IMG/VR virus record: IMGVR_UViG_3300042540_001822
Coordinates: 124,001-188,000 of that record
DNA: 64,000 nt
Reading direction: 5' to 3' (one strand)
In this document: piece after piece, positions 1 through 56,810 of the stretch
How positions within the stretch are numbered: the first letter of the stretch is position 1
Layout of the letters: each line of letters opens with the position of its first letter
Notes under the pieces: generated by a model
Databases searched by the model: none
What the model was told of the DNA's origin: nothing
Seen by the model: the letters and a program-made list of their open reading frames with translations, nothing else
Position numbers and translations under genes: made by a program

Positions 1-1126
1 TAGATAACGGCATTTTTATGCTTGGGTGGGATTGATAATTCTCCAATTTCCAGAAATCTGGTTTAAATTGTTCGATCTTTTGAGAAAATGGTATATCCAG
101 ATCCATCAAATAATGGTACTCGTCTTTCCCTAACATTTGTGGTAAAGAATAAGGCTTTCTTGTTAGCTGATCTTTAACCCCATCTATTTGATTCAAGTAA
201 ATGTGACAGTCTCCCATATTTGAAATGAGTTCATATGGTACCATACCAACCTCTTTAGCTATAATTGTTAATAATAGCCCATAAGATGCCAAATTAAAAG
301 GGGTCCCTAGTGGAACATCTTGACTTCTGGCATTGCACATTAAAGAGATTGCTCTGGTTGGGATATTAGATTTAGAAAGTTCAATGTGTATTTCATGCTC
401 GTTCATGTTTTCTGAATTTGAAGTGCAGTCAAAAAACTCTTCAAAGTAACTTAATCGTTCTTTAACGCTCAACTCTCTTGTATAAACTTGAAATCCATAA
501 TGACAAGGTGGAAGAGTCATCGAATCCAATTCACCTACATTCCAAGCTGAAACCATCAATCGTCTTGAGTCTGGGTTTGTTTTGAGTTCGTTGATTAGGT
601 TTTGGATTTGGTCTATTTTATTGTTTGGCCAAAATAAAGGTAGTTTATTTGGTCCAAAGTCATCTTGCCAACTTCTCCACTGCTTACCATAGATTGGACC
701 TAAATCACCCCACTTCTTAGCAAACTCATCATCTGTTTTAATTTTGTTGATAAATTCTTCTTTTGGATAAATTAGTTGTTTTTCTAATATCTGTATTGAT
801 ATCTCACTTCTGTCACCCTCAGTCCTGATAGCATGTTTATGTTTCTTTACATATGCTTTGTAACAATCACCATCCCAAATATGACAATCATTATCAACAA
901 GGTATTTAATATTTGTTTCTCCTCTTAAAAACCAAAGTAACTCAGTTACAATTGACTTCCAATGCATTTTTTTGGTTGTGAGTAATGGAAACCCCTCACT
1001 CATTTTATGACGGATTTGTCTACCAAATACTGAAATAGTACCAGTACCCGTTCTATCTTTCTTTTCCACTCCATTATCTAATATATCTTGGAGTAGTGAT
1101 TGATATTGTTTGTCTAAATTATTCAT
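1..1126 (-). CDS. thyA: Thymidylate synthase, running off the left edge within its last codons (not in ORF track)
   Basis: Manual translation: MNNLDKQYQSLLQDILDNGVEKKDRTGTGTISVFGRQ...FPLLTTKK...ELLWFLRG...LPPCHYGF...RSQDVPLGTPFNLASY...GDCHIYLNQ...YQSHPSIKMPLS. Confidence 0.97.
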   Translation of the reverse strand, partial: MNNLDKQYQSLLQDILDNGVEKKDRTGTGTISVFGRQIRHKMSEGFPLLTTKKMHWKSIVTELLWFLRGETNIKYLVDNDCHIWDGDCYKAYVKKHKHAIRTEGDRSEISIQILEKQLIYPKEEFINKIKTDDEFAKKWGDLGPIYGKQWRSWQDDFGPNKLPLFWPNNKIDQIQNLINELKTNPDSRRLMVSAWNVGELDSMTLPPCHYGFQVYTRELSVKERLSYFEEFFDCTSNSENMNEHEIHIELSKSNIPTRAISLMCNARSQDVPLGTPFNLASYGLLLTIIAKEVGMVPYELISNMGDCHIYLNQIDGVKDQLTRKPYSLPQMLGKDEYHYLMDLDIPFSQKIEQFKPDFWKLENYQSHPSIKMPLS

Positions 1127-35369: not shown

Positions 35370-35437
35370 ATGGGAATTTTAATTTTGATGTTGTTTATAC
35401 ATCAAATTTTAAAAAAATTTCCAATACAGAAATGAAA

Positions 35438-35614
35438 TTATTTAGATTGAAATCCAGTAAATGTTTTCTTGAAATCTTCGAATCCCATCAACTTTCCTAC
35501 AGTTGAATGTTTCAAACCTAAGGAACCTTGCTTTGTTCCAAAAATCTTTTGGTCGTACCACTTAATGAAATTATCTGGCGTGGTGTATTTTGCTTGTGGG
35601 GTAACTGTTTTCAT
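35438..35614 (-). CDS. Small protein, 58 aa (MKTVTPQAKY...KLMGFEDFKK...)
   Basis: Manual translation; fills the gap between flanking genes. Confidence 0.6.
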   Translation of the reverse strand: MKTVTPQAKYTTPDNFIKWYDQKIFGTKQGSLGLKHSTVGKLMGFEDFKKTFTGFQSK

Positions 35615-35617
35615 AAT

Positions 35618-36252: not shown

Positions 36253-36719
36253 GATTCATCAATCTTTAAAATTATATTGTTGACTCTTGGAGAATCTACT
36301 ATGAAAAATTTGCTTTTATCAACTTCTTCAATTATAAATTCTGTGGGATTTATACTTCCTCTCAACCAATATTTGGTTTTTCCAATTTTGAATTCGGTAT
36401 CCAAATGATCTGGGGTTAACTTTGAAAGTCTTATCCATTTGCTTTGATTTCTGATAAACTGGGTTCGATAGTATTCCAACAAAGAATCCGTTGGTTTTTT
36501 TATTTCTCTAAAAATTTGGGCCATTAATTTGTTTTTTCCTTGAGTTATACAACCAATTGGAAAAATAATTTCCCCGGTTGAATTTGAATTTTTACTTACG
36601 ATTGTTGTGGTGTTTGCATTTGTAATCTCAAACTTGTTAGATCGTCCATAATAGGACCAAGAATGAAAAATTCCTTTGACTCTTTTCCCATCTCGCAAAC
36701 TCCAGGTTGGCAGTACCAA
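36249..36719 (-). CDS. Hypothetical protein (true start probably MAQIFRE at 36524)
   Basis: Track start overlaps the upstream gene by >100 bp. Confidence 0.6.
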   Translation of the reverse strand: MVLPTWSLRDGKRVKGIFHSWSYYGRSNKFEITNANTTTIVSKNSNSTGEIIFPIGCITQGKNKLMAQIFREIKKPTDSLLEYYRTQFIRNQSKWIRLSKLTPDHLDTEFKIGKTKYWLRGSINPTEFIIEEVDKSKFFIVDSPRVNNIILKIDES

Positions 36720-37339
36720 TAAATGTTATAGTGAAAATGATTGTGATCCCCCGAAGACATTCTCTTCGATCCATTGACCTCGTTGGTCCAAGGATCCTCT
36801 CCATCGACCAGATGTTTTAAAAGATAATTTCTATCCCAAATGGTGGCATTGTGGGAGTGTAAATAATTTTCTCCATCCGAGTACTTTAGAATTTGTTTTT
36901 TGTTTATTTCAAATGGGGTTGGCTCCAATTTATAGGATTCATAGTAGTGCAATTTGGTGTGGATTTTGATTGAGTTTGCATTGTGTAACTCAACAAAAGA
37001 AACCAATTCTTCTAAAACTTCATCCCCGGGATATGAAAAAGGCCACATATCTTCTTGGATGTAAATTACCCACTTAGAAGGAATACGTTCTAATGCCAAT
37101 CTCATCCTGGTAGAAAAACCATTTTTGTCTGTCAACCCTGTTAAAATTGGTGTAATACCGGGATTCACGGTATATGGAAGATTACGACAAGACAAATTGA
37201 TGTCATGTACATTTTTTTCCTCTGAAGCCCAATAGACCGGTACCTTTTCAAAATTCCAATTGAAGTCAAGACCATAAAGCATACCAAACCAATATTGTTG
37301 GTATGAATCACAGGTGTGAACGAGCAAAGAAAGATCCAT
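36596..37339 (-). CDS. Glycosyltransferase-like protein (GT-A fold)
   Basis: LLVHTCDSY...WVIYIQEDMW; cluster context. Confidence 0.6.
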   Translation of the reverse strand: MDLSLLVHTCDSYQQYWFGMLYGLDFNWNFEKVPVYWASEEKNVHDINLSCRNLPYTVNPGITPILTGLTDKNGFSTRMRLALERIPSKWVIYIQEDMWPFSYPGDEVLEELVSFVELHNANSIKIHTKLHYYESYKLEPTPFEINKKQILKYSDGENYLHSHNATIWDRNYLLKHLVDGEDPWTNEVNGSKRMSSGDHNHFHYNIYWYCQPGVCEMGKESKEFFILGPIMDDLTSLRLQMQTPQQS

Positions 37340-37340: not shown

Positions 37341-38336
37341 TTAAAAATTTTGGAAATAATTCGATTTTTGAAGCTTTTCTAGATAATCTGTAATTTTAGA
37401 ACACTCTGATTCTCTCTTTTCCCCGTGTAAAACTTTGATCGATCTTTTTTCTTCCGGAATTTTATAAAAGCATAAAGAAGGATCTGGATTTTCCTCGGTC
37501 ATCCACGATGAAAATCCAGGTTGACCCTGTTCATAAAAATGTACGGTTGTCTCTAAACCATCTCTTAAATTAATGTAACACAAAGGCAAACCCTCGTTCG
37601 TTTTTTTCCAGGACAAAACATTGTAAATGGTTTCCTCGTGATAGGCAGCATAATAATTCAAATCTAAATTGAGTTTTGGTAACATAAAACAAAGCTCACG
37701 CCACATTTTCACAAAAGATAAACAATCTGGTGTGGCTAATATCACGTTAGTTGTTCTGTAGGTACCCCTCGAATCTGGAAACATCTGTAGAAATTGCATT
37801 AAAGGCCATTCTAAAGTTTTTGTGTGATCTGCCATGGGCCAACATCCTTCAAATGGATTACCTCTTTCTTTTCCAGATTCAATCATAATCATGTACTGAT
37901 GTATGCCTTCTGAACAGAGAGGATAGTTCTTAACAAGCGGAATCCAATCGAACAACTCGTCAACAATAGGAGTTCCTAAACAATCTGAATCTAGATAGCA
38001 AACCTCTTCGACACCAGACTCCAAAGCTTTTTCGATGGCAACAGTTTTGGCACAAAGGATTTGATAAATTCTTGGGCTTTTTCTTTCGATATAAAAATTT
38101 CCATCTGATTGTGTTCCAAAATCTTCAGGTCTCAAAGAATCGATAGGTAAATCAATATGAATTAGATGAACTTCCGTAATATCTTCGAAAGGATTGACGT
38201 TTTCCCGACAATTTATTCCATAAATTAGAATAGGAATGTCGGAAAATTTACGAATAGATAAAGCCAGATTTCTAGCGACCTGAAAATAATTTTCAGTCAC
38301 ATGGGTAATGTATGCTCTTTTCATAAGAACTCCCAT
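37341..38336 (-). CDS. Glycosyltransferase-like protein (DxD; start probably MKRAY)
   Basis: ARNLALSI, K..AI..AL, CYLDSDC, EETIYNVL. Confidence 0.65.
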   Translation of the reverse strand: MGVLMKRAYITHVTENYFQVARNLALSIRKFSDIPILIYGINCRENVNPFEDITEVHLIHIDLPIDSLRPEDFGTQSDGNFYIERKSPRIYQILCAKTVAIEKALESGVEEVCYLDSDCLGTPIVDELFDWIPLVKNYPLCSEGIHQYMIMIESGKERGNPFEGCWPMADHTKTLEWPLMQFLQMFPDSRGTYRTTNVILATPDCLSFVKMWRELCFMLPKLNLDLNYYAAYHEETIYNVLSWKKTNEGLPLCYINLRDGLETTVHFYEQGQPGFSSWMTEENPDPSLCFYKIPEEKRSIKVLHGEKRESECSKITDYLEKLQKSNYFQNF

Positions 38337-38443: not shown

Positions 38444-39271
38444 TTAATTAATTGATTTTATTTGATCAATGTTTCTTTTAGTATATCCTTCTTCTGGGAC
38501 ATTTACCAAAATCTTATTGATAAAAACCGACCTAAGGCTATTGCTTACCATATACTCACGAACACGCTCCCATAAATCACAATCACTTGGTGATACATTT
38601 CCAGTTTCCTCGTAAACATCCCGAAATAAAAGGGGTATTTTCACAAAATTCATGCAAACTGTTTGTGTTAATAAACGTGTGCAATGAGGGTAAATTTCGT
38701 GATAATCCTTGTCGCTCGGCAAACTATATAAAGGAAATTCCTGTCCATTTGTGAAATATCCTTTGGCAAAAACAAAGTCAGCCCCCGTTATCTTGATGCA
38801 CCGATTAACTTCCTCTAAATAAGTTGGATAGTAAAAATCATCATGGTTCTGCAAACATATAAAACTATGACCATCTCTCTTTGCCAACTCAATACCAGTA
38901 TTTATTGCATTTGCTCCGCCCGAACTCCAAAGCTTATCTCCATCTTCATATTTATCCCTCTCCTTGGCGTGAGGTAAATTTACAGCTTTGATTCTATGGT
39001 CGTAACTCTTGGCGATCTGGCCGAATTGTTCTTGGTCTGAGTATTTGTCACCAATCATGTAAACTTCAAAATCTTGGTGAGATTGAGCATAAATACTATC
39101 CAAAAGCCTGCGAATGTAAAATTCGCTTAGGCCATCGGGGCGTTGGTAAGTCGGAAATACTATTGGGAATGTCATATCTTTATTTTTTAATAATCCGGAA
39201 TCTAATGTTTGTTTCACATTAATCTTGATTTTTTTTATAAAAACGTTTATTTTCTGGTTGATACCATTCAT
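38444..39271 (-). CDS. Glycosyltransferase family 2 (start probably MTFPIV)
   Basis: IVFPTYQR, LLDSIYAQSHQDFE, AINTG, QNHDDFY. Confidence 0.85.
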   Translation of the reverse strand: MNGINQKINVFIKKIKINVKQTLDSGLLKNKDMTFPIVFPTYQRPDGLSEFYIRRLLDSIYAQSHQDFEVYMIGDKYSDQEQFGQIAKSYDHRIKAVNLPHAKERDKYEDGDKLWSSGGANAINTGIELAKRDGHSFICLQNHDDFYYPTYLEEVNRCIKITGADFVFAKGYFTNGQEFPLYSLPSDKDYHEIYPHCTRLLTQTVCMNFVKIPLLFRDVYEETGNVSPSDCDLWERVREYMVSNSLRSVFINKILVNVPEEGYTKRNIDQIKSIN

Positions 39272-40004
39272 CTAATGAAGCTGGGACTCTTGAATGGTAA
39301 CCTAAAAATTGTTGCATTTCATAAGTAAACGAATTCATTCTTTCATATCCTAAAGCTCTAGGATAATCTAATAATTGTTTCATAAATGATTTACTTATAG
39401 TAAAAGGAATAGCTCTTCTATTATTCTGGGTTTTATTAGGAGCTGAAGAATGCCACACATTAGAATTGAATATTAATATATCTCCTCTTTTTCCTGTTGC
39501 TTGGTGGGCATTGTTAAAAAACTCTTCATCGGTTGGTTTTCTTTCTTCTAAATGGGAACCGGTAAGAAGATAAGTCCCGCCATTCTCAATAGTAAAATCA
39601 TCTATCATAATTAAACAATTAAGCATTATAGGAAATTCTCCAGAATAAAATCTTAGATCACGATGTACTATGGATGAAAAATTAGGTTGGTTAGGTAAAT
39701 TATTTAAAGCACTAAATGAATTTAAAATACATTTACTATGGAAAAAATTATCTTGTAATGATTGAATAAACCCATTTTTAAGTAAAGTTTGTAAAAATTC
39801 TATAAATACCGGACTACTTAATAAAACATGAAGGGCAACCCCCATTGAATTAATATCATTATTATTATATAATTGAATATTTCTATGTTCTAAAAATGCT
39901 TTATCTATTTCACTAGATAGTATATCTAACCATTTTTTAGTTATTTGATTACGAACAATTACATAACCTTTTTCTTTTAATTCTTGGGATTGCTGTATTA
40001 TCAT
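39219..40004 (-). CDS. Phytanoyl-CoA dioxygenase (PhyH)-like 2OG-Fe(II) oxygenase
   Basis: HRD, ENGGT..L.GSH, GDILIF...WHSS..N...RR. Confidence 0.85.
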   Translation of the reverse strand: MIIQQSQELKEKGYVIVRNQITKKWLDILSSEIDKAFLEHRNIQLYNNNDINSMGVALHVLLSSPVFIEFLQTLLKNGFIQSLQDNFFHSKCILNSFSALNNLPNQPNFSSIVHRDLRFYSGEFPIMLNCLIMIDDFTIENGGTYLLTGSHLEERKPTDEEFFNNAHQATGKRGDILIFNSNVWHSSAPNKTQNNRRAIPFTISKSFMKQLLDYPRALGYERMNSFTYEMQQFLGYHSRVPASLDEWYQPENKRFYKKNQD

Positions 40005-40666
40005 TTTAAAAATTTTTCTCCTTCAACTCTATTTTTAATTATTTTAGCAGGGTTGCCGTATGCTAGTACATTTGATGGGATAGATTTAGTAACTAAACTA
40101 CCTGAGCCTATTACTGTGTTTTCTCCTATTTCTAATCTATCCATTATAGTTACCCCTAATGTAATAGCCGAAAATTTTCCAATTTTAACATATCCCCCTG
40201 TTAAGGATCCCGCAGATATACTAGCAAAATCTTCTATTTCATTATCATGTTCTACTTGTGCCCCTGTAGCAAAAAAAGTAAAATTACCTATTTTAGCTTT
40301 AGGATTAAAAATACATCCAGCCATTGCTACAATCCCTATTCCTAATTCAGTAGTATTTCCTATAATAACTGAGGGGTGAATAGCATTCACAAATTTAAAA
40401 TTAGGTATTAATTCATGTATTTGATTATAAACATAATACCTACTCCAATTATCTCCTATAGAAATTACTCCCCCATATATGTCATTTTGATTAATAATTT
40501 CTTTCAAATTTTCTTGACGACCTAAAATAGAATAACCAAATCTTTTACTTCCTATCTCATGGATTGAGTCAACAATACCAATAATATTATATTTTTTTTC
40601 TTTTTCAATAATATCTATAGTATAATGAGCTTGGTTACCTCCTCCTATTAAAATTATATTTTTCAC
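40001..40666 (-). CDS. Sugar acetyltransferase, NeuD/PglD hexapeptide-repeat family
   Basis: IILIGGGNQA, ISIGDN..R, IHPS, hexapeptide repeats, GNPAK. Confidence 0.92.
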   Translation of the reverse strand: MKNIILIGGGNQAHYTIDIIEKEKKYNIIGIVDSIHEIGSKRFGYSILGRQENLKEIINQNDIYGGVISIGDNWSRYYVYNQIHELIPNFKFVNAIHPSVIIGNTTELGIGIVAMAGCIFNPKAKIGNFTFFATGAQVEHDNEIEDFASISAGSLTGGYVKIGKFSAITLGVTIMDRLEIGENTVIGSGSLVTKSIPSNVLAYGNPAKIIKNRVEGEKFLK

Positions 40667-41289
40667 TTTGTATAAATTTTAAATTTAGATAAGTTGGGGT
40701 ATGGAAGCTCCAAATCAGCGTTATGCTTTTTGCTACCATCGGTGTTGTAAAATTGATTCATTAACAACAAGCCCCTCGTTGCAAGTTCGGGCATCATATA
40801 GAAATTCCATCCGAGCATATCAAAATGATCATCGTGATAACTGCACTCTCTCCTACCGCTATACCTTGCTCTTTTAAACCACAAATAAGCCTGATGATCA
40901 TCGGTAAGTATTGCTCCTCCCTTGGATAACTTAAAATGCTTGTACGGACCTGTAAACGATATGCACATATGGGTATTGGGAAGATACATATCAGCCGTAA
41001 ACCTTAAAGCACTATCCCAAACCCGGCTCGGTTTGAGTTGGTATGCGCCCTTCAATGTCGTTCCTTCAACTTCTTCAAAATCCACCCTTGCCCCTGCGTG
41101 GATGATTTCGCAAGGCACGGATGGGTATGTTCGTTCCGGGATAGTAATTGTTGTGCCTCCAACTTTCTCGTACATCAATGCTAAAAACAGTCCATTGGAT
41201 TGGTTGTCTAAGCACACTGCATAAGGAGCGCCGGTGTAGTCCGCAAGGCGTTTTTCAAATTCGTTGGTAATGTCATAAACAGTTTTCAT
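40663..41289 (-). CDS. Short DegT/DnrJ/EryC1/StrS aminotransferase-like protein (208 aa)
   Basis: FEKRLADYTG, DSA, SFTGPYKHF..SKGGAILTDD, GWNFYM. Confidence 0.8.
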   Translation of the reverse strand: MKTVYDITNEFEKRLADYTGAPYAVCLDNQSNGLFLALMYEKVGGTTITIPERTYPSVPCEIIHAGARVDFEEVEGTTLKGAYQLKPSRVWDSALRFTADMYLPNTHMCISFTGPYKHFKLSKGGAILTDDHQAYLWFKRARYSGRRECSYHDDHFDMLGWNFYMMPELATRGLLLMNQFYNTDGSKKHNADLELPYPNLSKFKIYTK

Positions 41290-41324: not shown

Positions 41325-41966
41325 TTAAATTTTGATTTTTTTTAAATAACCATTAGGGTTGAAAGTAACATTGTAACCATAAAAATCACACCATTTTCTA
41401 TCTATTTCGAATTGTGGATTTTGGGGCAAAAATTCTCCTATTGCTCTAAGAGGACCTCCGTCATAGTTTTTTTCGATGCCCATCCAATTCACAGTTCCAT
41501 CTTCAACGATCATATAGGAATCTTCGCTGATTAAATCTTTGAATTTATTCATCACAGACAAAACATCGTTATATTTGTGTGACCCGTCTTCAATCAACAT
41601 AATTTTTTCAAATGAGGATGCATAATCCAAGTTGTATTCTTGATAACCTCCCAAGAATCTCTGAATTCTTGGATGTCGATTAATCAAACCCCTCTTTTCT
41701 TCGGAATTTGATAAAAAAGTTTCATCCTGAATATCCACAGTATGAACCATACCTTTACCTATATTATTTAAAATATCACCCAAATACAGGCAGGATCCTC
41801 CATAATTAGTCCCTATCTCTATTATCAAATCGGGTTTTATTTCATTAATTATCATTTGATACATTACGTAATCAAATGGGGATTTTTCAGTTATGATTCC
41901 TCTATATAAAGTTTTTAGATGTCCATCCATGATACCATCTAAATTTAAGTTGTATGAATTGTTCAT
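41325..41966 (-). CDS. CmcI / rhamnosyl O-methyltransferase family
   Basis: EKSPFD, KPDLIIEIGT..GGS, EDGSH, YMIVED. Confidence 0.88.
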   Translation of the reverse strand: MNNSYNLNLDGIMDGHLKTLYRGIITEKSPFDYVMYQMIINEIKPDLIIEIGTNYGGSCLYLGDILNNIGKGMVHTVDIQDETFLSNSEEKRGLINRHPRIQRFLGGYQEYNLDYASSFEKIMLIEDGSHKYNDVLSVMNKFKDLISEDSYMIVEDGTVNWMGIEKNYDGGPLRAIGEFLPQNPQFEIDRKWCDFYGYNVTFNPNGYLKKIKI

Positions 41967-41975: not shown

Positions 41976-42380
41976 TTAAAGATCCACTCTCATAGTATTG
42001 CACTCCCTGAAAAATCCACATCTTTCATAGAAATTTATTCTCTCATCAAAACAGGATAGAATAACCTTATAACATCCAAGATATCTTGCTTTTTCCAATG
42101 CTTTTTGAACTAATAAATAACCAATTTTATTACCTCTAAATTTTTCTTTTACTGCTACATCCTCAATATACCCAGCTATTCCCCCGTTCCTTATTAATTT
42201 TTTTTGAATATGAAGGGTAATTGTTCCTATAATTTCTTCCCCTTCAACCGCTACAAAGTTATGATTGTTAAGCATCCACTGGTCTAAATTGTGAATTTCA
42301 ATTTCTGTAATCCACCATGTTTCACTAAGGACTTTCAATAAACCTAGTTCATCTCCTTTTTGAAATTCTCGAATAATCAT
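41976..42380 (-). CDS. GNAT acetyltransferase, glucosamine-6-P N-acetyltransferase-like
   Basis: GYIEDVAV...RGNKIG..LV...GCYKVILSC...FYERCGF. Confidence 0.88.
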   Translation of the reverse strand: MIIREFQKGDELGLLKVLSETWWITEIEIHNLDQWMLNNHNFVAVEGEEIIGTITLHIQKKLIRNGGIAGYIEDVAVKEKFRGNKIGYLLVQKALEKARYLGCYKVILSCFDERINFYERCGFFRECNTMRVDL

Positions 42381-42385: not shown

Positions 42386-43546
42386 TTATTTTTGAGATTC
42401 TAAAACTCGATCAATTACAAATTCAATTTCTTCGTCTCTTAAATAAAGATGCAAAGGAAGACTGATGATTTTTTCGCTTGAAATTAAAGAATTGGGGTTT
42501 AGCCCAAATTGAGATTTATACATCTCATAATTAGTATTGTCTCTATAATGAACCCCGGGATAGATTCCGTTCATATTCAAGTATTCCATAGTTTTATTTC
42601 TTTCCTCTACAATTATTTGGTACAAATGTCTGGAAGAGATTTCCGTATAAGGAGAAACTTTAACTGATTTAATGCCAGATGATTCAAAAGCAGTTTCATA
42701 AATTTTGCAGATCTCCCTCCTTCTTTCATTATCTTCTTCCAAATATTTGAGACCTACCAAAGCCATAGAAGCCATCATAGAATTTCCATGGTATTTAAAT
42801 CCGACATCTACCAGATCATATTCCCATTTATAACTCCCTTTATCATGGGATCTCTGGTAAGTGTCTTTTGAAATTCCAAGCCAAGATAATTTTCTAGCTA
42901 AAGCGTCGTAATCCTCGTTTTTAAAACAGATCATTCCTGAATCAGCGGTAGGGAGGTTTTTAACAGCCTGAAAACTAAAAATGGAAACATCAGCATCTAA
43001 ACCAACATGGTCTTTCGAGTATCCAACCCCAATCTCTGTTTTGTTTTTGACCCAGGTTCCGGCCATATGTGCGGCGTCTAAAATAATTTTTAGGCCTTTT
43101 TTTTTGCAAAGTTTTACTATTTCATCAAACCTACCGGCATTACCACCAATACCAACAAATAAAACAGCTTTGGTTTTTTTAGTAATTTTTGATTCAACTG
43201 ACTTAGGATCTAAGCAAAGAAATTCATCCACGTCCGCAAAAATTGGTTTCAACCTTTCGTACAAAATCGCATGATTCGAAGAAACGAAAGTTAGAGGAGA
43301 CGTGATAACCTCATCTCCATCTTTCCATTTATTTGCATCTTTCAAAATTTTCAAGGCAAGATGTAAACCTGATGTGTTAGAATTTATAAAATGCGAATGG
43401 TTGAATCCAGTGTACTTTTTCCATTCTTCTTCAATCTGCTGAGTTTTAAAACCTAAACCAGTCCAGCCCATTTCCATACATTCCTCCATTATTTCGAAAA
43501 TTTCGGAAGTTCTAAATTTAGGTTTAAATAATTGAATATTTTTCAC
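42386..43546 (-). CDS. DegT/DnrJ/EryC1/StrS PLP-dependent sugar aminotransferase
   Basis: NSNTSGLHLAL, DAAH, FSFQAVKNL...DSGM. Confidence 0.95.
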   Translation of the reverse strand: MKNIQLFKPKFRTSEIFEIMEECMEMGWTGLGFKTQQIEEEWKKYTGFNHSHFINSNTSGLHLALKILKDANKWKDGDEVITSPLTFVSSNHAILYERLKPIFADVDEFLCLDPKSVESKITKKTKAVLFVGIGGNAGRFDEIVKLCKKKGLKIILDAAHMAGTWVKNKTEIGVGYSKDHVGLDADVSIFSFQAVKNLPTADSGMICFKNEDYDALARKLSWLGISKDTYQRSHDKGSYKWEYDLVDVGFKYHGNSMMASMALVGLKYLEEDNERRREICKIYETAFESSGIKSVKVSPYTEISSRHLYQIIVEERNKTMEYLNMNGIYPGVHYRDNTNYEMYKSQFGLNPNSLISSEKIISLPLHLYLRDEEIEFVIDRVLESQK

Positions 43547-44649
43547 AACAAATAATAATTTTTTACTAGAGCATACTTAGACAAGTTTTCTCTTTTAATT
43601 TTTATAGAATCTGTGAATTGACATGTTTCATCTCCTATATTCTGTAATTTTTTTGTAAAAACTACAGAATCCCCATCTACAAACAAATCATTCAATTTTT
43701 CTTTGTACCAAGTTCCTTTTCTCAAAATAATTTCTCGTTTATAAAATAATTCGCCATTTTCATTTTCAATCTGAATTTCGAATTTTATTTCTTCCCCGAA
43801 AAAACCGTAGTCTACTTCCAAAAGCAATGAACATTCACTAAGATCTTCTTTCCAAAATATCGAAGAAGTTGTTTGGGAATGTAAAGAACTAGGTCCTGGT
43901 TGTATAACTGAACTTTTTAAGTTCCAATTCCCAATTCCAAAAAAATTATCTAATTCTTCATAATTGCAAATTAAATTGTCGTCTTGAACAAAAAGTTGTA
44001 AAATTACATCTTCACCAGAGCAATTAGGAAAATGTTTTTGATAAACTGAATTATCAGAAAAATCTATATTTGGAATTCTGTTTATTAAAATTTCATCAAC
44101 GCTGAATCCGAAAAAGAATCCAGAAAACCAACTGCTAAAATTTGGGCTATTTCTAATAAAGAAATTCCTTTTTTTTCCTAGGTCATTAAAAACCTGATTA
44201 AATTTTTCTAGGATATTATCTGGGCATTTAAAATCACCTACAAAATAAAAAGAAAAATCATAACCTTTAGAATGAACAAATTTTATAGAGTTAAAAAATT
44301 GGGACATAATAGCAACAGACCAACCAGTGATTACTACATAATCTCTAAACATCTCGTTTCCAATAGTCATAAATTTCATATAAATTGGATTCGATATACC
44401 TTGTAAATTGTAATTTAAAATGTCGGAATCAAGGAAATGGTAATTGTTTTTCTTTTCAAAAATAAAATAAGTCGAGTTTTCAATTATTTCTGGAGTACAC
44501 GGGTGATGGCTGGTAAGTAAAACATCTATGTTATTTAATTTGAATTTTTTTAAGTTCTCTAATAGAATTTTCTGTTCATCTTCTGTTTGAGGATAAGCAT
44601 CAATAATAACACAAAATTTTTTTTCTGTGTAATTTTTTTTGGAGTCCAT
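43543..44649 (-). CDS. Unknown protein, paralogous N-terminal domain with 50458..51390 (GT-like?)
   Basis: AYP...KIL.E.L...LLTSHHP...Y.IFEK.N. Confidence 0.65.
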   Translation of the reverse strand: MDSKKNYTEKKFCVIIDAYPQTEDEQKILLENLKKFKLNNIDVLLTSHHPCTPEIIENSTYFIFEKKNNYHFLDSDILNYNLQGISNPIYMKFMTIGNEMFRDYVVITGWSVAIMSQFFNSIKFVHSKGYDFSFYFVGDFKCPDNILEKFNQVFNDLGKKRNFFIRNSPNFSSWFSGFFFGFSVDEILINRIPNIDFSDNSVYQKHFPNCSGEDVILQLFVQDDNLICNYEELDNFFGIGNWNLKSSVIQPGPSSLHSQTTSSIFWKEDLSECSLLLEVDYGFFGEEIKFEIQIENENGELFYKREIILRKGTWYKEKLNDLFVDGDSVVFTKKLQNIGDETCQFTDSIKIKRENLSKYALVKNYYLL

Positions 44650-44683: not shown

Positions 44684-45598
44684 TCAATTTTTCCAAGCCC
44701 ATATCATGTTTCCAGTGTGGTGTGTTTGGAATCCATTTTCTGAAAAGATAAGCAACAATTGATCCGGAGGATGAATATGATATTCTAAAACTATCTTTGG
44801 TATAGACTTTAAAAATTCAGAGCTTAAGTAAGGCAAAATTTCCCATTCACATCCTTCACAGTCGATTTTCAAAAAATCTATTTTTACTCCAGATTCTCTA
44901 GCCCATTCTTCCAGAACAACTCCTTGGCAAGAAACACTTTCATCAGTATGATCAAACGAAAAAGAAACTGAATTCAAAACACTAAAGTCATGTATGTTTA
45001 ATCTTAAATCTTTTTTTTCAGACCACACGGCTGAATTGTTAACATGAATTGGTAAATCCCCAAAATTTGTTTGTATAAAGTTTGATAATTTGGGATCTGG
45101 TTCAAAAGAGTGAACTTTAGAAGCACCTTGTGTAATTGAAAAATAAGTGAATAAACCAATATTAGCCCCAATATCAACAACAACATCTCCAGGTTCTACT
45201 TTACAACGATCGTGGTTATATTCACCGTTAAGAAAAATCTCCCAAAGTACCAATCCGGTTGATAAGTCTTTTTTTGAAAGATTACTCCCTATATTTTTCA
45301 ACTTGTTTTTTTGGTCTAAATTTCTTACATCATGTTGAAAAACATCCGAGTAATCACAAACTTGAAGTAGGATTTCTTCAGTTTTAGAATCTTCCACTAC
45401 AAAAGTCATTAATTTTGTAATTCTACCGTCATAAGATGCCCAGTAGGAACATTTTGGAAGGACTTTCATTGTTTCCCCCCTGAAAATTAAACTAGTATAT
45501 GAATCAATGAACTTAATTACAATTTCTTTTTCTTCATCAAAATGACTTGTAAAATCTATTCCGTTTCTATCTGGTAAAATGTGATTCAATGAGATCAT
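44684..45598 (-). CDS. FkbM-family methyltransferase
   Basis: VVDIGANIG, FEP, IDFLKIDCEGCE, VLEYH. Confidence 0.92.
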   Translation of the reverse strand: MISLNHILPDRNGIDFTSHFDEEKEIVIKFIDSYTSLIFRGETMKVLPKCSYWASYDGRITKLMTFVVEDSKTEEILLQVCDYSDVFQHDVRNLDQKNKLKNIGSNLSKKDLSTGLVLWEIFLNGEYNHDRCKVEPGDVVVDIGANIGLFTYFSITQGASKVHSFEPDPKLSNFIQTNFGDLPIHVNNSAVWSEKKDLRLNIHDFSVLNSVSFSFDHTDESVSCQGVVLEEWARESGVKIDFLKIDCEGCEWEILPYLSSEFLKSIPKIVLEYHIHPPDQLLLIFSENGFQTHHTGNMIWAWKN

Positions 45599-45604: not shown

Positions 45605-46381
45605 TTATTTGTTGTTTTGTTTAAGAACTTCTTTTTCTTTATTGAAGCAATGTAAAGAAGTGATGTGCATGGTAAAAAGTCCAGGTTTTACATTTTCCCA
45701 AGATTCGGGACTTCTCTCTTTCAATTTTTCTAGAACCCAAAAAACTTTGCGGCAAGCCATGTAAATATCGTCCCTGAAATGGCGGAGGTAGTCGCAAGAC
45801 CTTATGTAATACACGATGTGTAAATAATCTGCTCTTCTCATAAAATGATAACCGATTGTACAAGGAACTCGTTCACCGTGAACAGAACCAGTGTCTTCAG
45901 GGAACCACAAAGGAAGAAATGCCTGCCTTGTAAAAGGTTCTCTTTGTAGCAAATCGATCACATCCCCAAAGTCACCATAATGGTACCTGATACCAAACAT
46001 GGTAGATTTGGGTTCTTCCGATGCAAATTTAGGCCAGAGCCTTTCGGGATAAGTGTGAGAAAATTTCTCCTCGATTTTAAACTGGGCGTTCTTCTTTTGG
46101 TTGAAAGGCCACCATTCGTTCGAAGGTGGTGGATTTAAAGGTTGGCCCCCTATTCTTTCTTCAAAATGATCGTCCGCCCAGGGAAGATTAGGTCTGACCT
46201 CCTCGCGTAGCTCCTGAAGTGTACCTGGCACAAACATAGAGAAAGATGTATTTAAAGTTTCCCACATGTCGTCGGGAGAAGTTATACCCTGCCATCTCTC
46301 GGTCTGTACAACATATCCATAGTCGATCAATTTTTCCTTAGCCCACTTGATGGCTTGTGAGGGCTTTTGAAATGTTTTCAA
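45605..46381 (-). CDS. Thymidylate-synthase-fold pyrimidine-modifying enzyme, dCMP hydroxymethylase-like
   Basis: TRQA, VPCT (catalytic Cys), IRSCDYLRHFRDD with Asp at the TS Asn177-equivalent position, SLH. Confidence 0.8.
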   Translation of the reverse strand: MKTFQKPSQAIKWAKEKLIDYGYVVQTERWQGITSPDDMWETLNTSFSMFVPGTLQELREEVRPNLPWADDHFEERIGGQPLNPPPSNEWWPFNQKKNAQFKIEEKFSHTYPERLWPKFASEEPKSTMFGIRYHYGDFGDVIDLLQREPFTRQAFLPLWFPEDTGSVHGERVPCTIGYHFMRRADYLHIVYYIRSCDYLRHFRDDIYMACRKVFWVLEKLKERSPESWENVKPGLFTMHITSLHCFNKEKEVLKQNNK

Positions 46382-46455: not shown

Positions 46456-47109
46456 TTATTGGTTCAACCAAAAAAATAATTCTTCATTACCAATCAAATT
46501 TAAATCCCTAACTCTATTTTTTTGAAAAACTTTATATTCGAAATATGGGTTGTCAAAGGGAACGAGCTCTTGTCTTCCTCTTTTAATAAGACCAACTCCC
46601 TCATCGATATTAAGAGTACAAATATTTAAGTCAGATCTAGTTGCCTTTAATTTATAAATCGTTTTCCAAACCGTTCCGTTCCATGGCTGTCCCCAATTAT
46701 CCTCAACTAATCTGGTATAATTTTCTTCATACATAAATGGGTCACAATCATGCAAAACAATAACACCATTTTCTGATAAGTGATTCAAAGAATTCAATAT
46801 GTCTTTTTCCACCTGATAAGAAAGATGTAATCCATCAATAAAAATTAGGTCCCACTTATAATCAGGAGGTAAATCCAACAAATTATTTTCTAGCCTAATA
46901 AAGAATTCATCCGATGTGTATTGGTATTTAACTGGATTTTCCTGGTACTCTAAACCTGGATCTACCCCGGATTTTTCTGGACATTGAATTAAATCGAAAC
47001 AATCCCACGGGAATCTAACTCCTATTTCTAAATAGGTATTAAAATTTTTTGTTTGAATGATTTGGTTGATTACTTCAGATCTGTGCATGAATATAAACTT
47101 GTTTACCAA
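46456..47109 (-). CDS. Class I SAM-dependent methyltransferase-like
   Basis: YLEIGV, GVDP, DLIFIDGLH, VLHDC, WNGTVWK. Confidence 0.85.
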   Translation of the reverse strand: MVNKFIFMHRSEVINQIIQTKNFNTYLEIGVRFPWDCFDLIQCPEKSGVDPGLEYQENPVKYQYTSDEFFIRLENNLLDLPPDYKWDLIFIDGLHLSYQVEKDILNSLNHLSENGVIVLHDCDPFMYEENYTRLVEDNWGQPWNGTVWKTIYKLKATRSDLNICTLNIDEGVGLIKRGRQELVPFDNPYFEYKVFQKNRVRDLNLIGNEELFFWLNQ

Positions 47110-47658: not shown

Positions 47659-47817
47659 TTACTGAACTGCCGTGGTTGAATCTACAGAGGTAGTGTCCGC
47701 AGATTCAACTACTGTAGAATCCACTGTTGTCTCCTCGGAAGGAGCAGTTTCTTCTGTTGGTGTAGCACATGAGCTCAGAATCAAAGCTGAGACAAGCAAG
47801 AAAAACAAATTTTTCAT
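47659..47817 (-). CDS. Small lipoprotein, 52 aa (MKNLFFLLVSALILSSCATPTEETAPSEETTVDST...)
   Basis: Manual translation; signal peptide with LSSC lipobox; Ser/Thr/Asp-rich tail; own terminator. Confidence 0.8.
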   Translation of the reverse strand: MKNLFFLLVSALILSSCATPTEETAPSEETTVDSTVVESADTTSVDSTTAVQ

Positions 47818-48149: not shown

Positions 48150-48938
48150 TTAAAATTTTGAGGATTCGAGATATTGTCTTTTTCTTTCATTCAGTGTTTT
48201 TCTTCCTTCCGATAACCAATTTTCCTGTGCGTTTGAATTTTCATCTTTAGTTTCTGATGGATAAGTTAATGAATTAGGATGAACACGATAAACATAACTG
48301 GGATATTGAAGATATTCAATTTTTCCTCTTAGAGAAAGCTCAAAGTTCATCGGCCAGTCGGAATAAGGAAATTCTTCCATATATTTTTGAAATAAATCAG
48401 GATAATTCACAAAAAATCTAGAAGATGAAGTAACACAGTTGTGTTGATTAGCAATAAAATCCGAAGAAGTATATTCCTCTTTTTGTAAGTGTTCAGGAGG
48501 CCCAAAAAAATAATTTCCTGTTCTTAGAGGTTCGAATTTTTTTTCATTCTCGTTGTATATTATGTAAGCCGTGAAACACATTGATAAATCTTTATTATTT
48601 TCCATAATTTCATACTGATTTTGGAGTTTGTTCGGATCTATCCAATAGTCATCAGCATCTAAATAAGCTATGTAATCACCGGTTGCCTGTTCAAGTAAAA
48701 ATTTTGTATTTTGTATTTCTCCGGAATTAGATCTAGAAAAATAGCGAAACGAAAATTTATGTCCTGGAAGTATATTTTTAAAGTACTCTAAAACTTCTAA
48801 ACTTTGATCCGTAGATCCATCATCCGAAACCAGAATTTCTACGGGGAAAGAAGTTTGTTGACATAAAACGGAAAATAAACAGGTGTCCAAAAATCTACCA
48901 TAATTATAATTAGGTATAATGACCGTTACTTTTTTCAT
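48150..48938 (-). CDS. Glycosyltransferase family 2
   Basis: VTVIIPNYNYGRFL, VSDDGSTD, YIAYLDADDYW. Confidence 0.93.
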   Translation of the reverse strand: MKKVTVIIPNYNYGRFLDTCLFSVLCQQTSFPVEILVSDDGSTDQSLEVLEYFKNILPGHKFSFRYFSRSNSGEIQNTKFLLEQATGDYIAYLDADDYWIDPNKLQNQYEIMENNKDLSMCFTAYIIYNENEKKFEPLRTGNYFFGPPEHLQKEEYTSSDFIANQHNCVTSSSRFFVNYPDLFQKYMEEFPYSDWPMNFELSLRGKIEYLQYPSYVYRVHPNSLTYPSETKDENSNAQENWLSEGRKTLNERKRQYLESSKF

Positions 48939-48948
48939 TTTTAAAAAA

Positions 48949-49629
48949 TTATTGATTTACAAAATAAAACATTGTTTGATGTTCCCCGTTATTATTTACA
49001 TCCCAATAAAAAGAATGTCTAACTTTTCCTGGAATAAAAAAAGTTTCATTAAGAATAGGATCGTGTGTTTCTACTGCTATTTTATTTATTTTATTTAAAA
49101 TTGATTCATCCAAGTTTTGGAATAAATCATATTCTCCACCTTCAATGTCACACTTCAAAAAGTCAATTTTTTCCAAATTGAAAATTTTGAAAACATCCTC
49201 CATTTGCAAATAAAGGGGGTTGTGTTTTGGTGACCATAAGTGTGTTGGATGTAGGGATTTTCCCAAAACAGAAGCATTCAAATATTTTACATTGTTGTGT
49301 TCTTTTGTATTTTCTATAAGACAAGAAAAAACTTCATAACCTCCATCTATAGCTATTATTTCTTTACATTTTTTTGCTGCCAAGTGAGTAAAGAAACCAA
49401 CATTTGCCCCCAAATCAACCACCACATCTTCTGGATTAAGTTTGCAATCCCACATTTCATAAATGCAATTAGTTTCAGAGAATTCCCAGCCATAAATTTC
49501 CTTGAAGAGAAATTCATAACCAAAAAAAGAATTGGAACTTAAAACAAAATCAAGATTTTGATTCCAATAATGGTTATTCTTGTCTGAAAAAAGTTTCCAA
49601 TTTTTTCCTGTCATTTTATTTATATTCAT
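48949..49629 (-). CDS. FkbM-family methyltransferase
   Basis: VVDLGANVG, IDFLKCDIEGGEY, AVETH. Confidence 0.9.
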   Translation of the reverse strand: MNINKMTGKNWKLFSDKNNHYWNQNLDFVLSSNSFFGYEFLFKEIYGWEFSETNCIYEMWDCKLNPEDVVVDLGANVGFFTHLAAKKCKEIIAIDGGYEVFSCLIENTKEHNNVKYLNASVLGKSLHPTHLWSPKHNPLYLQMEDVFKIFNLEKIDFLKCDIEGGEYDLFQNLDESILNKINKIAVETHDPILNETFFIPGKVRHSFYWDVNNNGEHQTMFYFVNQ

Positions 49630-50055
49630 TTATTTTTGGCTATCACCTTTCGAAACCCGATAAGAATCTGACTCAATGTGGTGAGTTGAAACTTCAAAGA
49701 TTATACCCTCTGTTATTGCTTCCAGTTGATGTGGTGTTCCTGGCTTTTGTCTCACACAGTCACCTTTTTTTAAGGTTGTCTCAACTACATCTGCATTCCT
49801 GGTGTCGATGAATCTATAAATGAAAGTTCCTTCCTGAACATACCACGTTTCATCCTTAATCAAATGGTAGTGCATAGAAAATTTGGCTCCGGCTTTGAAG
49901 CAAAGAAGTTTCCCACAATACAATTCGTTGTTTTCGAAAACAATCTCTTGCCCCCACCCTTTTGGTATATTACAACTGGGGCATTCCAAAGCATTGTAAA
50001 TATGTGAAAGGTTGATTTCAATCATTTCAATTGGAGGATTTGGCAAATAGGACAT
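49630..50055 (-). CDS. Cupin-domain protein, sugar isomerase-like
   Basis: PKGWGQE, YCGKLL, SMHYH..KDETWYV, PGTPHQL. Confidence 0.85.
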   Translation of the reverse strand: MSYLPNPPIEMIEINLSHIYNALECPSCNIPKGWGQEIVFENNELYCGKLLCFKAGAKFSMHYHLIKDETWYVQEGTFIYRFIDTRNADVVETTLKKGDCVRQKPGTPHQLEAITEGIIFEVSTHHIESDSYRVSKGDSQK

Positions 50056-56781: not shown

Positions 56782-56810
56782 GAAAGTGGGAAGAAATTTT
56801 TCCTTATATA

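What the first reader, a model, noticed from the sequence alone, without database searches (positions are those of the whole stretch)
45605..46381. Second thymidylate-synthase homologue with the dCMP-specificity Asp, inside a sugar-modification cluster
Seen: RSCD-YLRHFRD-D places Asp eight residues after the RSxD Asp, whereas the canonical ThyA in this window has Asn there (RSQD-VPLGTPF-N). Established: E. coli TS Asn177 selects dUMP; T4 dCMP hydroxymethylase (RSND-VVFGFRN-D) has Asp179 and selects dCMP. Inference: the phage makes a modified cytosine. The flanking glycosyl-, amino-, acetyl- and methyltransferases and the 2OG oxygenase could build an unusually elaborate sugar on it, i.e. a possibly new DNA hypermodification.
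Basis: partly seen in the sequence, partly recalled or inferred. Interest (0 to 1): 0.78.

Follow-up and report, generated by a model that had tools for sequence, protein, structure and literature searches.

The report
Divergent phage dCMP-modifying thymidylate-synthase homologue
A large marine phage carries, beside a normal thymidylate synthase, a second very divergent copy whose active site looks built for cytosine rather than uracil nucleotides, so the phage probably makes a modified cytosine for its DNA; the neighbouring sugar genes are a lineage-specific insertion and nothing ties them to the DNA.

Summary
Window 45605-46381 (-) is a real 258-aa gene with a full thymidylate-synthase (TS) fold (pLDDT 96; Z about 20 to TS, MilA, T4 dCMP hydroxymethylase and phage dCMP hydroxylase). 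It keeps the catalytic Cys174 and R194-S195-x-D197, and has Asp205 where E. coli ThyA has Asn177.

It belongs to a large, essentially phage-only clade that includes Mycobacterium phage Muddy gp46. I found no experimental characterisation of this clade. In it the Asp is 98% conserved. The clade also has Thr/Ser at the H147 position, Arg at L143, His at G173 and only a 14-residue C-terminal tail.

It branches beside T4 gp42 and RB69 gp48, not with ThyA or the Xp12 dCMP methylase. It coexists with a true ThyA or ThyX in the window phage, its jumbo relatives and phage Zuko. Its usual neighbours are replication and nucleotide genes.

The best reading is a pre-replicative dCMP C5-modifying enzyme whose product is unknown but probably not a methyl group.

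The sugar cluster is real. It is a hypervariable, roughly 9-kb insertion found only in the window's closest relatives, next to a conserved backbone gene. A glycosylated DNA base is therefore possible (RB69 is a precedent) but unsupported. Virion or host-protein glycosylation is at least as likely.

The parts
45605..46381 (-). TS-like gene (258 aa), putative dCMP C5-modifying enzyme
   Evidence: ORF. phrog_160 at 5e-25 and PF00303 at 20.6 bits, below the 24.3 cut-off. AlphaFold2 pLDDT 96.4. TS fold over residues 1-258.
45860..45862 (-). Codon of catalytic Cys174 (E. coli C146), in the motif R171-V-P-C-T
   Evidence: Alignments. Cys is 98% and Arg171 99% conserved. A family member carries an intein at exactly this Cys.
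45767..45802 (-). R194-S-C-D197...D205 motif (E. coli R166, S167, D169, N177 positions)
1..1126 (-). Canonical ThyA (376 aa with insertions, Asn at position 177); its 3' end runs 5 nt past the window start
   Evidence: PF00303 at 309.7 bits. 35% identity to E. coli ThyA. Key residues.
44684..45598 (-). FkbM-family methyltransferase, 7 nt downstream of the TS-like gene
   Evidence: PF05050 and TIGR01444.
43543..44649 (-). 368-aa virus-specific protein whose relatives occur fused to GT1/GT9/GT2 domains (probable glycosyltransferase-associated domain)
   Evidence: No Pfam or PHROG hit. Atlas structure neighbours.
42386..43546 (-). DegT/ArnB/PseC-type sugar aminotransferase
   Evidence: PF01041 at 1e-72. 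NCBIfam.
41976..42380 (-). GNAT acetyltransferase
   Evidence: PF00583.
41325..41966 (-). CmcI / rhamnosyl O-methyltransferase-like
   Evidence: PF04989 at 4.5e-32. NF045824.
40663..41289 (-). 208-aa protein with only the N-terminal part of a DegT aminotransferase
   Evidence: PF01041 residues 5-79. The same cluster is present in L033.
40001..40666 (-). NeuD/PglB/VioB-family sugar N-acetyltransferase
   Evidence: TIGR03570 at 166 bits, above its cut-off. PF17836.
39219..40004 (-). PhyH-type 2OG/Fe(II) oxygenase
   Evidence: PF05721 at 8.8e-21.
38444..39271 (-). GT2 glycosyltransferase
   Evidence: PF00535.
37341..38336 (-). 331-aa GT8-like / nucleotide-diphospho-sugar transferase-like protein, shared by the window clade
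   Evidence: Atlas features and structure. Present in L024, L025, L027, L032, L033.
36596..37339 (-). 247-aa unknown protein, last gene of the clade-specific island
36267..36509 (-). Backbone gene 'c1', which in other relatives lies within about 3 kb downstream of the TS-like gene and here follows the island
   Evidence: tblastn. Gene orders.
46456..47109 (-). Methyltransf_24 class-I methyltransferase upstream of the TS-like gene
   Evidence: PF13578. Same position in L024, L032, L100.
47659..47817 (-). 52-aa lipoprotein with three D(S/T)(A/I/L/V/M/T) motifs
48150..50055 (-). Upstream variable genes: GT2 (48150-48938), FkbM methyltransferase (48949-49629), cupin (49630-50055)

Best explanation
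The gene encodes a thymidylate-synthase-fold enzyme of a distinct, phage-restricted clade. It acts on a cytosine deoxynucleotide (dCMP) rather than dUMP. Cys174 attacks C6 and Asp205 reads and protonates the N3/N4 face of cytosine. A one-carbon group is then put on C5; the cofactor is most likely folate, because the Asp169 equivalent is kept. The clade lacks the C-terminal tail and Tyr209 that methyl-forming enzymes use to close the site for hydride transfer. The product is therefore more likely a hydroxymethyl-type or otherwise non-methyl group than 5-methyl-dCMP. The modified dCMP would be phosphorylated and incorporated during replication, while the separate canonical ThyA supplies dTMP. 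Shown: the fold, the residues, their conservation, coexistence with true TS genes, and the genomic contexts. Inferred: substrate, cofactor, product and incorporation into DNA. The surrounding sugar island is treated as a separate, lineage-specific module whose target is unknown.
For: The TS fold covers the whole length (pLDDT 96.4; Foldseek top hits MilA, phage HY126 dCMP hydroxylase and T4 dCH; Z 19-21). Family-wide invariants are C174, R194, S195, D197, D205 and H244. The residue pattern is T/S at H147, F at Y209 and a 14-residue tail, like gp42 and RB69 gp48 and unlike ThyA and Xp12, whose tails are 57-68 residues. In the tree the clade is monophyletic (0.92) and sister to gp42+gp48 (0.93), with the Xp12/PaMx74 methylases outside. 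It coexists with ThyA in the window and in five jumbo relatives, and with ThyX in Zuko. In small phages it sits in a conserved module of dNMP kinase, NTP pyrophosphatase, X, TS-like, dCMP deaminase and PolA. That is the neighbourhood reported for cytosine-modified phage contigs (bioRxiv 10.1101/2024.12.05.627091; PMC8670742). In some jumbo relatives a NUDIX (4 loci) or Metallophos (21 of 85 loci) hydrolase lies just upstream. One member carries an intein exactly at the catalytic Cys, which is typical of replication and nucleotide enzymes. No DHFR was found in five genomes carrying the clade, whereas Xp12 and PaMx74 place DHFR beside their methylase. The rule that Asn177 changed to Asp gives dCMP preference is taken from PMC13326640 and PMC8670742.
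Against: No member of the clade has a measured activity that I could find. The Glu58 equivalent appears to be Asn/Asp, but the N-terminal half aligns only by structure, so this is uncertain. Arg at the L143 position and His at G173 have no precedent, so the product rules do not apply cleanly. The held genome record shows no dCTPase, MazG, NUDIX, dUTPase, deaminase or thymidylate kinase. That record is incomplete, however: it lacks a whole segment present in a 93%-identical relative, which includes the deaminase. In the NEB screen, deaminase-linked Asp177 TS homologues mostly made 5-methyl-dCMP.
Confidence: 0.5

Rival explanations
1. It is an Xp12-like dCMP methyltransferase that makes 5-methyl-dCMP. 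In phages with the linked deaminase, part of the 5-methyl-dC pool is deaminated to give thymidine nucleotides.
For: Asp is at the N177 position. In small phages the TS-like gene is followed directly by a dCMP deaminase and PolA. That is the module in which five of seven tested TS homologues made 5mdCMP (bioRxiv 10.1101/2024.12.05.627091). Muddy, Serbin and PMBT14 have no other TS, so they would need such a route or the host's TS.
Against: Xp12 and PaMx74 enzymes are ThyA-like: E58, G173 and Y209 are kept, the C-terminal tail is 63 residues, and DHFR is adjacent. This clade lacks all of these features, branches away from them, and no DHFR was found in five carrier genomes.
Confidence: 0.2
2. 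It is a flavin-dependent dCMP hydroxylase (5-hydroxy-dCMP synthase, as in RB69 gp48 and HY126 AfhB). The hydroxyl would be the acceptor for the sugars built by the neighbouring genes.
For: The best VIA-align matches are the HY126 dCMP hydroxylase structures (Z 20.9 and 20.6). It has the same 14-residue tail and Phe at Y209 as RB69 gp48. In RB69 the TS homologue also sits among sugar-nucleotide genes (PMC13326640).
Against: The diagnostic Asp169-to-Asn change reported for all tested 5hodCMP synthases (PMC13326640) is absent: Asp197 is 96% conserved. The Z-scores of all TS-family structures lie within 1.5 units of each other, so the ranking does not discriminate.
Confidence: 0.1
3. It does not serve DNA at all. 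Like MilA (CMP hydroxymethylase), it would modify a ribonucleotide or nucleotide-linked intermediate as part of the adjacent glycan or small-molecule pathway.
For: The top Foldseek hit is MilA. In the window it is embedded among sugar-tailoring genes on the same strand, with gaps of a few bases.
Against: The gene is far more widespread than the island and is usually found beside PolA/PolB, deaminase, kinase and RNase HII genes. L037 has the same backbone and no sugar genes within 7 kb. One member has an intein at the active site. Atlas relatives are fused to deaminase or thymidylate kinase.
Confidence: 0.07
4. It acts on dUMP, either as a spare thymidylate synthase or as a dUMP hydroxymethylase for thymine replacement.
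For: It is annotated as 'thymidylate synthase' in 138 GenBank phages. The module with dUTPase and dCMP deaminase would feed dUMP, as in SPO1-type phages (my own knowledge).
Against: Asp, not Asn, is at position 177 in 98% of members. It coexists with ThyA or ThyX. It scores below Pfam's TS threshold.
Confidence: 0.06

Closest known systems
T4 gp42 deoxycytidylate hydroxymethylase (PDB 1B5E, 6A9A)
   Same: TS fold, catalytic Cys followed by Thr, R-S-x-D, the 'F-R-x-D' segment with Asp at the N177 position, no long C-terminal tail, and coexistence with a true TS in the same phage. It is in the sister clade in my tree.
   Different: Sequence identity is only about 14-15% in the structural alignments. 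The L143 position is Arg, not Asp. The Glu60 equivalent is apparently Asn/Asp. G173 is His and Arg127 is Gln. The N-terminal half has its own invariant motif (W68, H72, E75, R76, N83, P84, W91).
RB69 gp48 / HY126 AfhB 5-hydroxy-dCMP synthase (PDB 9IQC, 9IQU; PMC13326640)
   Same: A compact TS fold of similar length, a 14-residue tail, Phe at Y209, Thr at H147, Asp at N177, and (in RB69) a location inside a sugar-nucleotide and glycosyltransferase cluster.
   Different: It keeps Asp169 where these enzymes have Asn, and has Arg where they have Glu at L143. No flavin evidence can be obtained here.
Xp12 / PaMx74 dCMP methyltransferase with a linked 5mC-selective deaminase (bioRxiv 10.1101/2024.12.05.627091)
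   Same: Asp at N177. In small phages the same gene neighbourhood is found (pyrophosphatase, TS homologue, deaminase, PolA).
   Different: Those enzymes are ThyA-like in sequence (E. coli ThyA E 8e-29), with a long tail and an adjacent DHFR. This clade matches them only at E 1e-7 to 1e-11 over the C-terminal core.
MilA CMP hydroxymethylase (PDB 5JNH)
   Same: Best Foldseek match (TM 0.72). It has Asp at both specificity positions, according to PMC13326640.
   Different: MilA is a bacterial antibiotic-pathway enzyme acting on a ribonucleotide, with 13% identity. The clade here is phage-only and sits in replication contexts.
Giant-virus and phage virion glycosylation clusters (for example the Mimivirus viosamine/bacillosamine genes; my own knowledge)
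   Same: The island's content: a DegT aminotransferase, an N-acetyltransferase, several glycosyltransferases and O-methyltransferases.
   Different: Those clusters are not associated with a TS homologue. Here the target of the glycan is unknown.

Membership tests
Thymidylate synthase superfamily (fold) | TS alpha/beta fold over the whole protein | tested here: met
   AlphaFold2 pLDDT 96.4. Foldseek E 5e-13 and TM 0.65-0.73 over about 258 columns. VIA Z 19-21. Family profile against PDB TS at E 1.6e-12.
Thymidylate synthase superfamily (fold) | Catalytic Cys plus phosphate-binding Arg/Ser (C146, R166, S167, R126) | tested here: met
   C174, R194, S195 and R152 are each at least 94% conserved. 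R127 is Gln.
Canonical ThyA (dUMP to dTMP) | Asn at position 177 | tested here: not met
   Asp205; 99 of 101 members have Asp.
Canonical ThyA (dUMP to dTMP) | Pfam PF00303 above its gathering score; long C-terminal tail; Tyr209; Glu58 | tested here: not met
   20.6 bits against 24.3. The tail is 14 residues against 57-68. Phe is at the Y209 position. Asn is at the apparent E58 position, but that alignment is uncertain.
T4 gp42-type dCMP hydroxymethylase | Asp at the N177 position and Asp169 kept | tested here: met
   D205 and D197.
T4 gp42-type dCMP hydroxymethylase | Acidic residue at the L143 position (PMC13326640) | tested here: not met
   Arg171, 99% conserved.
T4 gp42-type dCMP hydroxymethylase | Formation of 5-hydroxymethyl-dCMP from dCMP and methylene-THF | not testable with these tools
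   Needs an enzyme assay or LC-MS.
5-hydroxy-dCMP synthase (RB69 gp48 / AfhB) | Asp169 replaced by Asn (diagnostic according to PMC13326640) | tested here: not met
   Asp197 is conserved in 97 of 101 members.
Xp12-type dCMP methyltransferase | ThyA-like core with a C-terminal tail; DHFR and deaminase adjacent | tested here: not met
   A deaminase is adjacent only in small-phage members of the clade, not in the window.
DNA glycosylation gene cluster (RB69/DLP3 type) | The TS homologue, NDP-sugar synthesis genes and a DNA glycosyltransferase are co-located, and the co-location is conserved among relatives | tested here: not met
   Co-location holds in the window and six close relatives. It is absent in L037 and the L003-type, L065/L068-type, PolB-type and PolA-type loci. 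The island is an insertion between the TS-like gene and backbone gene c1.
DNA glycosylation gene cluster (RB69/DLP3 type) | A glycosyltransferase that acts on DNA | not testable with these tools
   The GT2, GT8-like and GT-associated proteins carry no feature that tells DNA from protein or lipid acceptors.

The most novel reading that the evidence does not exclude
The clade is a new class of dCMP C5-modifying enzymes, with an Arg/His-lined active site and an unknown product. In the window's lineage its product in DNA would be decorated after replication by the adjacent hypervariable island with aminated, N-acetylated and O-methylated sugars. That would be a DNA hypermodification of a kind not yet described, and the strain-to-strain variation of the island would reflect an arms race with modification-dependent host nucleases or glycosylases.
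Probability: 0.12. Interest if true: 0.9.

Novelty: new variant of a known kind. Interest (0 to 1): 0.55.

Why it matters
TS homologues are the entry point of most pre-replicative pyrimidine modifications in phage DNA. This clade is large: more than 4,800 clusters at 90% identity, and 138 GenBank phages. It is routinely annotated as plain 'thymidylate synthase'. It occurs in cultured and medically used phages such as Muddy, as well as in abundant aquatic jumbo phages. If it makes a modified cytosine, those genomes carry an unrecognised base. That would affect restriction and CRISPR evasion, sequencing bias, phage engineering and therapeutic use. Its unusual active site (Arg at L143, His at G173, no Glu58) could mean new chemistry on the TS scaffold. 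The question can be tested directly, because several carriers are in culture.

Tried and rejected
1. Megablast of 12 kb of the window against GenBank phages gave no match.
2. Pfam, NCBIfam and a single-sequence PDB search gave only weak TS hits. A family profile was needed.
3. I tested whether the clade is the Xp12/PaMx74 methylase type and rejected it.
4. I searched the held genome for dCMP deaminase, MazG, PRA-PH, dUTPase, NUDIX and thymidylate kinase. All were negative. I then found that the record lacks a whole segment present in a near relative, so these negatives are not informative.
5. The 'X' proteins next to the gene in small phages (Muddy gp47 and others) look like a second, even more divergent TS-like paralogue with Cys and Asp. 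They have no homologue in this genome, so I did not pursue them.
6. The structural ranking among TS-family enzymes does not discriminate function; all Z-scores are 19-21.
7. Literature searches for any report on the DNA of Muddy, GTE2, PMBT14, Serbin or Strzyga found nothing. The NEB preprint's supplement, which might show whether tested enzymes belong to this clade, is not held.
The single-protein scan found only four MAG contigs, which fits a virus-restricted family.
9. I could not inspect model coordinates, so the placement of Arg171, His201 and the N-terminal invariants around C5 is inferred from alignment only.
Full report
OBSERVATION. The ORF at 45605-46381 on the minus strand is real: 258 aa with a TTG start. 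Homologues start at the same residue. It contains R194-S-C-D197-Y-L-R-H-F-R-D-D205 at window 45802-45767. The window also holds a canonical ThyA at 1-1126 (-), which scores 310 bits to PF00303 and has RSQD...N. T4 gp42, read from NC_000866, has RSND-VVFGFRN-D. A profile-profile alignment of 100 family members against ThyA, Xp12, gp42 and gp48 has probability 98.8% and E 8e-17. It aligns C174, R194, S195, D197, D205 and H244 with E. coli C146, R166, S167, D169, N177 and H207, with no gap between D197 and D205.

WHAT THE PROTEIN IS. Single-sequence searches barely see TS: PF00303 gives 20.6 bits against a 24.3 cut-off, and the best PDB E-value is 0.014. PHROG 160 matches at 5e-25, and a family profile hits solved TS structures at 1.6e-12. 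AlphaFold2 with a 100-sequence alignment gives mean pLDDT 96.4 and pTM 0.93. The whole chain superposes on TS-family structures. The Foldseek top hits are MilA CMP hydroxymethylase, the phage HY126 dCMP hydroxylase, TS and T4 dCMP hydroxymethylase. VIA-align Z-scores are 19-21 for all of them, with the HY126 enzyme first by a margin too small to carry meaning. So this is a genuine but deeply divergent TS-fold enzyme.

THE FAMILY. There are 4,873 clusters at 90% identity with E below 1e-5. At 50% identity, 145 clusters score below 1e-30 and 698 below 1e-3. 138 GenBank phages carry it, all annotated 'thymidylate synthase' or hypothetical. They include Mycobacterium phage Muddy (gp46), many Gordonia phages, Streptomyces phage Zuko, Serratia phage Serbin, Pseudomonas phage PMBT14 and Yersinia phage P744. 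Among 185,579 species genomes only four MAG contigs hold a close relative, and Atlas clusters are viral. The family is essentially phage-only. I found no paper that reports its activity or the DNA composition of a carrier.

ACTIVE SITE. Across 101 diverse members the following are at least 94% conserved: C174, R194, S195, D197 (= D169), D205 (= N177; 99 of 101 are Asp), H244 (= H207) and R152 (= R126). Three clade-specific residues are also conserved: R171 at the L143 position (99%), H201 at the G173 position (91%), and Q153 for R127. The residue after the Cys is Thr/Ser, as in gp42 and gp48; it is His in ThyA. The Y209 position is Phe, as in gp48. Only 14 residues follow H244, the same as in gp48. 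gp42 has 30, and the methyl-forming enzymes (E. coli ThyA, the window ThyA, Xp12, PaMx74) have 57-68. The N-terminal half has its own invariant set (W30, Q31, W68, H72, E75, R76, N83, P84, W91, H109, Y111, E113, R114, W116). It aligns with TS only structurally, so the apparent replacement of Glu58 by Asn/Asp is uncertain.

I applied three published rules (PMC13326640; PMC8670742). Asn177 changed to Asp gives dCMP preference, and this is met. An acidic residue at L143 goes with hydroxymethyl rather than methyl products; this is not met, because the residue is Arg. Asp169 changed to Asn marks 5-hydroxy-dCMP synthases; this is not met, because Asp is kept. The enzyme therefore fits none of the characterised product classes cleanly.

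PHYLOGENY. In a FastTree LG+gamma tree on 245 trimmed columns (22 family members and 6 references), the family is monophyletic (support 0.92). It is sister to T4 gp42 plus RB69 gp48 (0.93). The Xp12/PaMx74 dCMP methylases branch outside this group but inside an all-Asp177 clade (0.999). The branches are long, so the sister relation should be taken cautiously.

NON-REDUNDANCY AND CONTEXT. The window phage has a true ThyA as well. So do the complete 373-kb, 434-kb and 344-kb jumbo relatives, a 250-kb relative, and a 230-kb relative whose TS-like protein is 93% identical. Zuko has ThyX as well. The gene is therefore not simply the phage's thymidylate synthase.

I clustered the neighbours in 85 related loci (TS-like 48-93% identical). 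They are mostly replication and nucleotide genes. A dCMP deaminase occurs in 13 loci and PolA in 10, both directly downstream in the PolA-type loci I inspected. In other groups I found PolB, RNase HII, a Metallophos hydrolase immediately upstream (21 loci), an IMPDH/FMN-type oxidoreductase immediately upstream, and NUDIX with a non-specific endonuclease just upstream.

In small cultured phages the module is fixed. It reads thymidylate/dNMP kinase, NTP pyrophosphatase (MazG, dUTPase_2 or PRA-PH type), an unknown protein X, the TS-like gene, dCMP deaminase and PolA. That is the neighbourhood found enriched on cytosine-modified contigs (PMC8670742; bioRxiv 10.1101/2024.12.05.627091). Atlas structural relatives include fusions to deaminase and to thymidylate kinase. 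One member (P0121) has an intein inserted exactly at the catalytic Cys. All of this points to DNA-precursor metabolism.

THE SUGAR ISLAND. The genes from 36.6 to 45.6 kb and from 46.4 to 50.1 kb encode the following:
- two GT2 enzymes;
- a GT8-like protein;
- a virus-specific domain otherwise found fused to GT1/GT9 (Aah/TibC-like) transferases;
- a DegT/PseC/ArnB-type aminotransferase;
- a NeuD/PglB/VioB N-acetyltransferase;
- a GNAT acetyltransferase;
- FkbM (two copies), CmcI-like and MT24 methyltransferases;
- a PhyH oxygenase;
- a cupin.

Close relatives (TS-like 83-94% identical: L024, L025, L027, L032, L033, L100) also have sugar and methyl-transfer genes around the TS-like gene, but the sets differ. 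More distant relatives with the same backbone do not. L037 (75% identical) reads NUDIX, c194, endonuclease, TS-like, c195, c1, c5, GlnS-like, with no glycosyltransferase within 7 kb. The L003 type reads MGS, Metallophos, TS-like, c1, c11, c5 and so on. In the window the backbone genes c1, c11, c5, GlnS-like, c6 and c7 are all present in the same order, but they begin at 36509. The island is therefore a lineage-specific, hypervariable insertion of about 9 kb beside a conserved gene.

This does not exclude a functional link. RB69 shows that a TS homologue can sit in a DNA-arabinosylation cluster (PMC13326640), and phage GT-A enzymes can glycosylate DNA (bioRxiv 10.1101/2023.12.21.572611). But conservation gives the link no support, and the enzyme set resembles the protein or surface glycan clusters of large viruses (my own knowledge).

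A conserved 52-54-aa lipoprotein gene inside the region (47659-47817) carries two or three D(S/T)(A/I/L/V/M/T) motifs in every relative. From memory, this motif is the Bacteroidota protein O-glycosylation sequon. That is a small hint towards a protein target and a Bacteroidota host. The host inference also fits the polymerase relatives (Lak and Chryseobacterium phages), a T9SS-tail protein in relatives and a Saprospirales-binned contig.

THE GENOME. The window is 124001-188000 of a 219,475-bp IMG/VR record. The phage has T4-like replication genes: RNR, topoisomerase II, a split PolB, a gp41-type helicase and a gp46/47-type nuclease. Its PolB is nearest to 460-735-kb uncultured 'huge' phages. 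Searches of the record for deaminase, MazG, PRA-PH, dUTPase, NUDIX and thymidylate kinase were negative. However, none of 17 ORFs from an 18-kb segment of the 93%-identical relative G005 has a counterpart in the record. That segment includes the relative's dCMP deaminase, a sigma factor and proteins of 1220 and 902 aa. The record is incomplete and the negatives are not informative. All five jumbo relatives tested have a deaminase, a ThyA and the TS-like gene, which is the T4 trio of cd, td and gene 42. A small AAA_33 P-loop kinase lies at 52383-52775.

MECHANISM AND RIVALS. I commit to a pre-replicative dCMP C5-modifying enzyme (confidence 0.5). I expect folate-dependent transfer without hydride reduction, that is, a hydroxymethyl-type or other non-methyl product. 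The reasons are the retained Asp169, the missing closing tail, Tyr209 changed to Phe, and the absence of DHFR in five carrier genomes, whereas the Xp12 and PaMx74 methylases have DHFR alongside. The rivals are:
- an Xp12-like methylase (0.2), favoured by the deaminase-PolA module;
- a flavin-dependent hydroxylase (0.1), favoured by the structural and tail similarity to gp48/AfhB but contradicted by Asp169;
- a non-DNA, MilA-like role in the island (0.07);
- a dUMP enzyme (0.06).
I put the probability that the island decorates the modified base at about 0.12.

NOVELTY. The kind of system, a phage TS homologue retargeted to dCMP, is known. This clade is a distinct, apparently uncharacterised variant with its own active-site signature, and it is widely mis-annotated. 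The claim of an elaborate new sugar hypermodification remains speculation.

Noticed in passing
window 47659-47817 (-); L024 6798-6959, L025 8759-8923, L027 9738-9896, L028 3434-3592: A conserved 52-54-aa lipoprotein gene (signal peptide, lipobox Cys) with an acidic Thr/Ser-rich tail. The tail carries 2-3 D(S/T)(A/I/L/V/M/T) motifs in every relative although the sequence drifts. From memory, this is the Bacteroidota O-glycosylation sequon.
   Followed up: partly
protein P0121 (636 aa, metagenomic family member): An intein (Hint/intein-splicing domains) is inserted exactly at the catalytic Cys of the TS-like enzyme (RVP|C...HN|CTIGYHF). Other members (P0217, P0262) carry LAGLIDADG-containing insertions.
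   Followed up: partly
L018 5214-6047, L019 5192-6001, L021 6045-6938, L023 5886-6947, L030 5144-5932: The unknown protein 'X' just upstream of the TS-like gene in Muddy, Zuko, Serbin, P744 and PMBT14 (phrog_13667 / phrog_34294) aligns weakly with the TS core. It keeps a Cys, an Arg and an Asp at the C146, R166 and N177 positions but lacks D169. It may be a second, even more divergent TS-fold paralogue. It is absent from the window genome.
   Followed up: partly
G000 as a whole; L113 (G005 18001-36000): The window's genome record lacks any counterpart of an 18-kb segment of a 93%-related phage. The segment has 17 ORFs, including a dCMP deaminase, a sigma-70-type factor and proteins of 1220 and 902 aa. 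No ORF in the record is longer than 821 aa, so the stated 88% completeness is probably too high.
   Followed up: yes
window 1-1126 (-); G005 220086-220367 and 221457-222191: The canonical ThyA is 376 aa with two large insertions relative to E. coli ThyA. In the near relative G005 the ThyA match is split into two pieces about 1.1 kb apart, possibly by an intron or homing element.
   Followed up: no
window 34308-35369 (-), 55309-56814 (-), 52789-53463 (-): The phage carries a glutamine-synthetase-like gene, a RimK/ATP-grasp ligase and a ClpP protease. The first two are conserved backbone genes in the jumbo relatives.
   Followed up: no
window 57894-59060 (-); L016 15484-17055 (-): The family-B DNA polymerase is split into two separate genes about 20 kb apart (388 aa and 523 aa). 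The related 300-430-kb phages also carry the C-terminal PolB part as a separate ~382-aa gene.
   Followed up: no
L068, L076, L083, L090 (IMG/VR loci): In one group of relatives a 355-aa IMPDH/GMP-reductase/FMN-dehydrogenase-type protein lies immediately upstream of the TS-like gene. In the L003-type jumbo phages it lies about 5 kb downstream. It could be a redox or cofactor partner.
   Followed up: no
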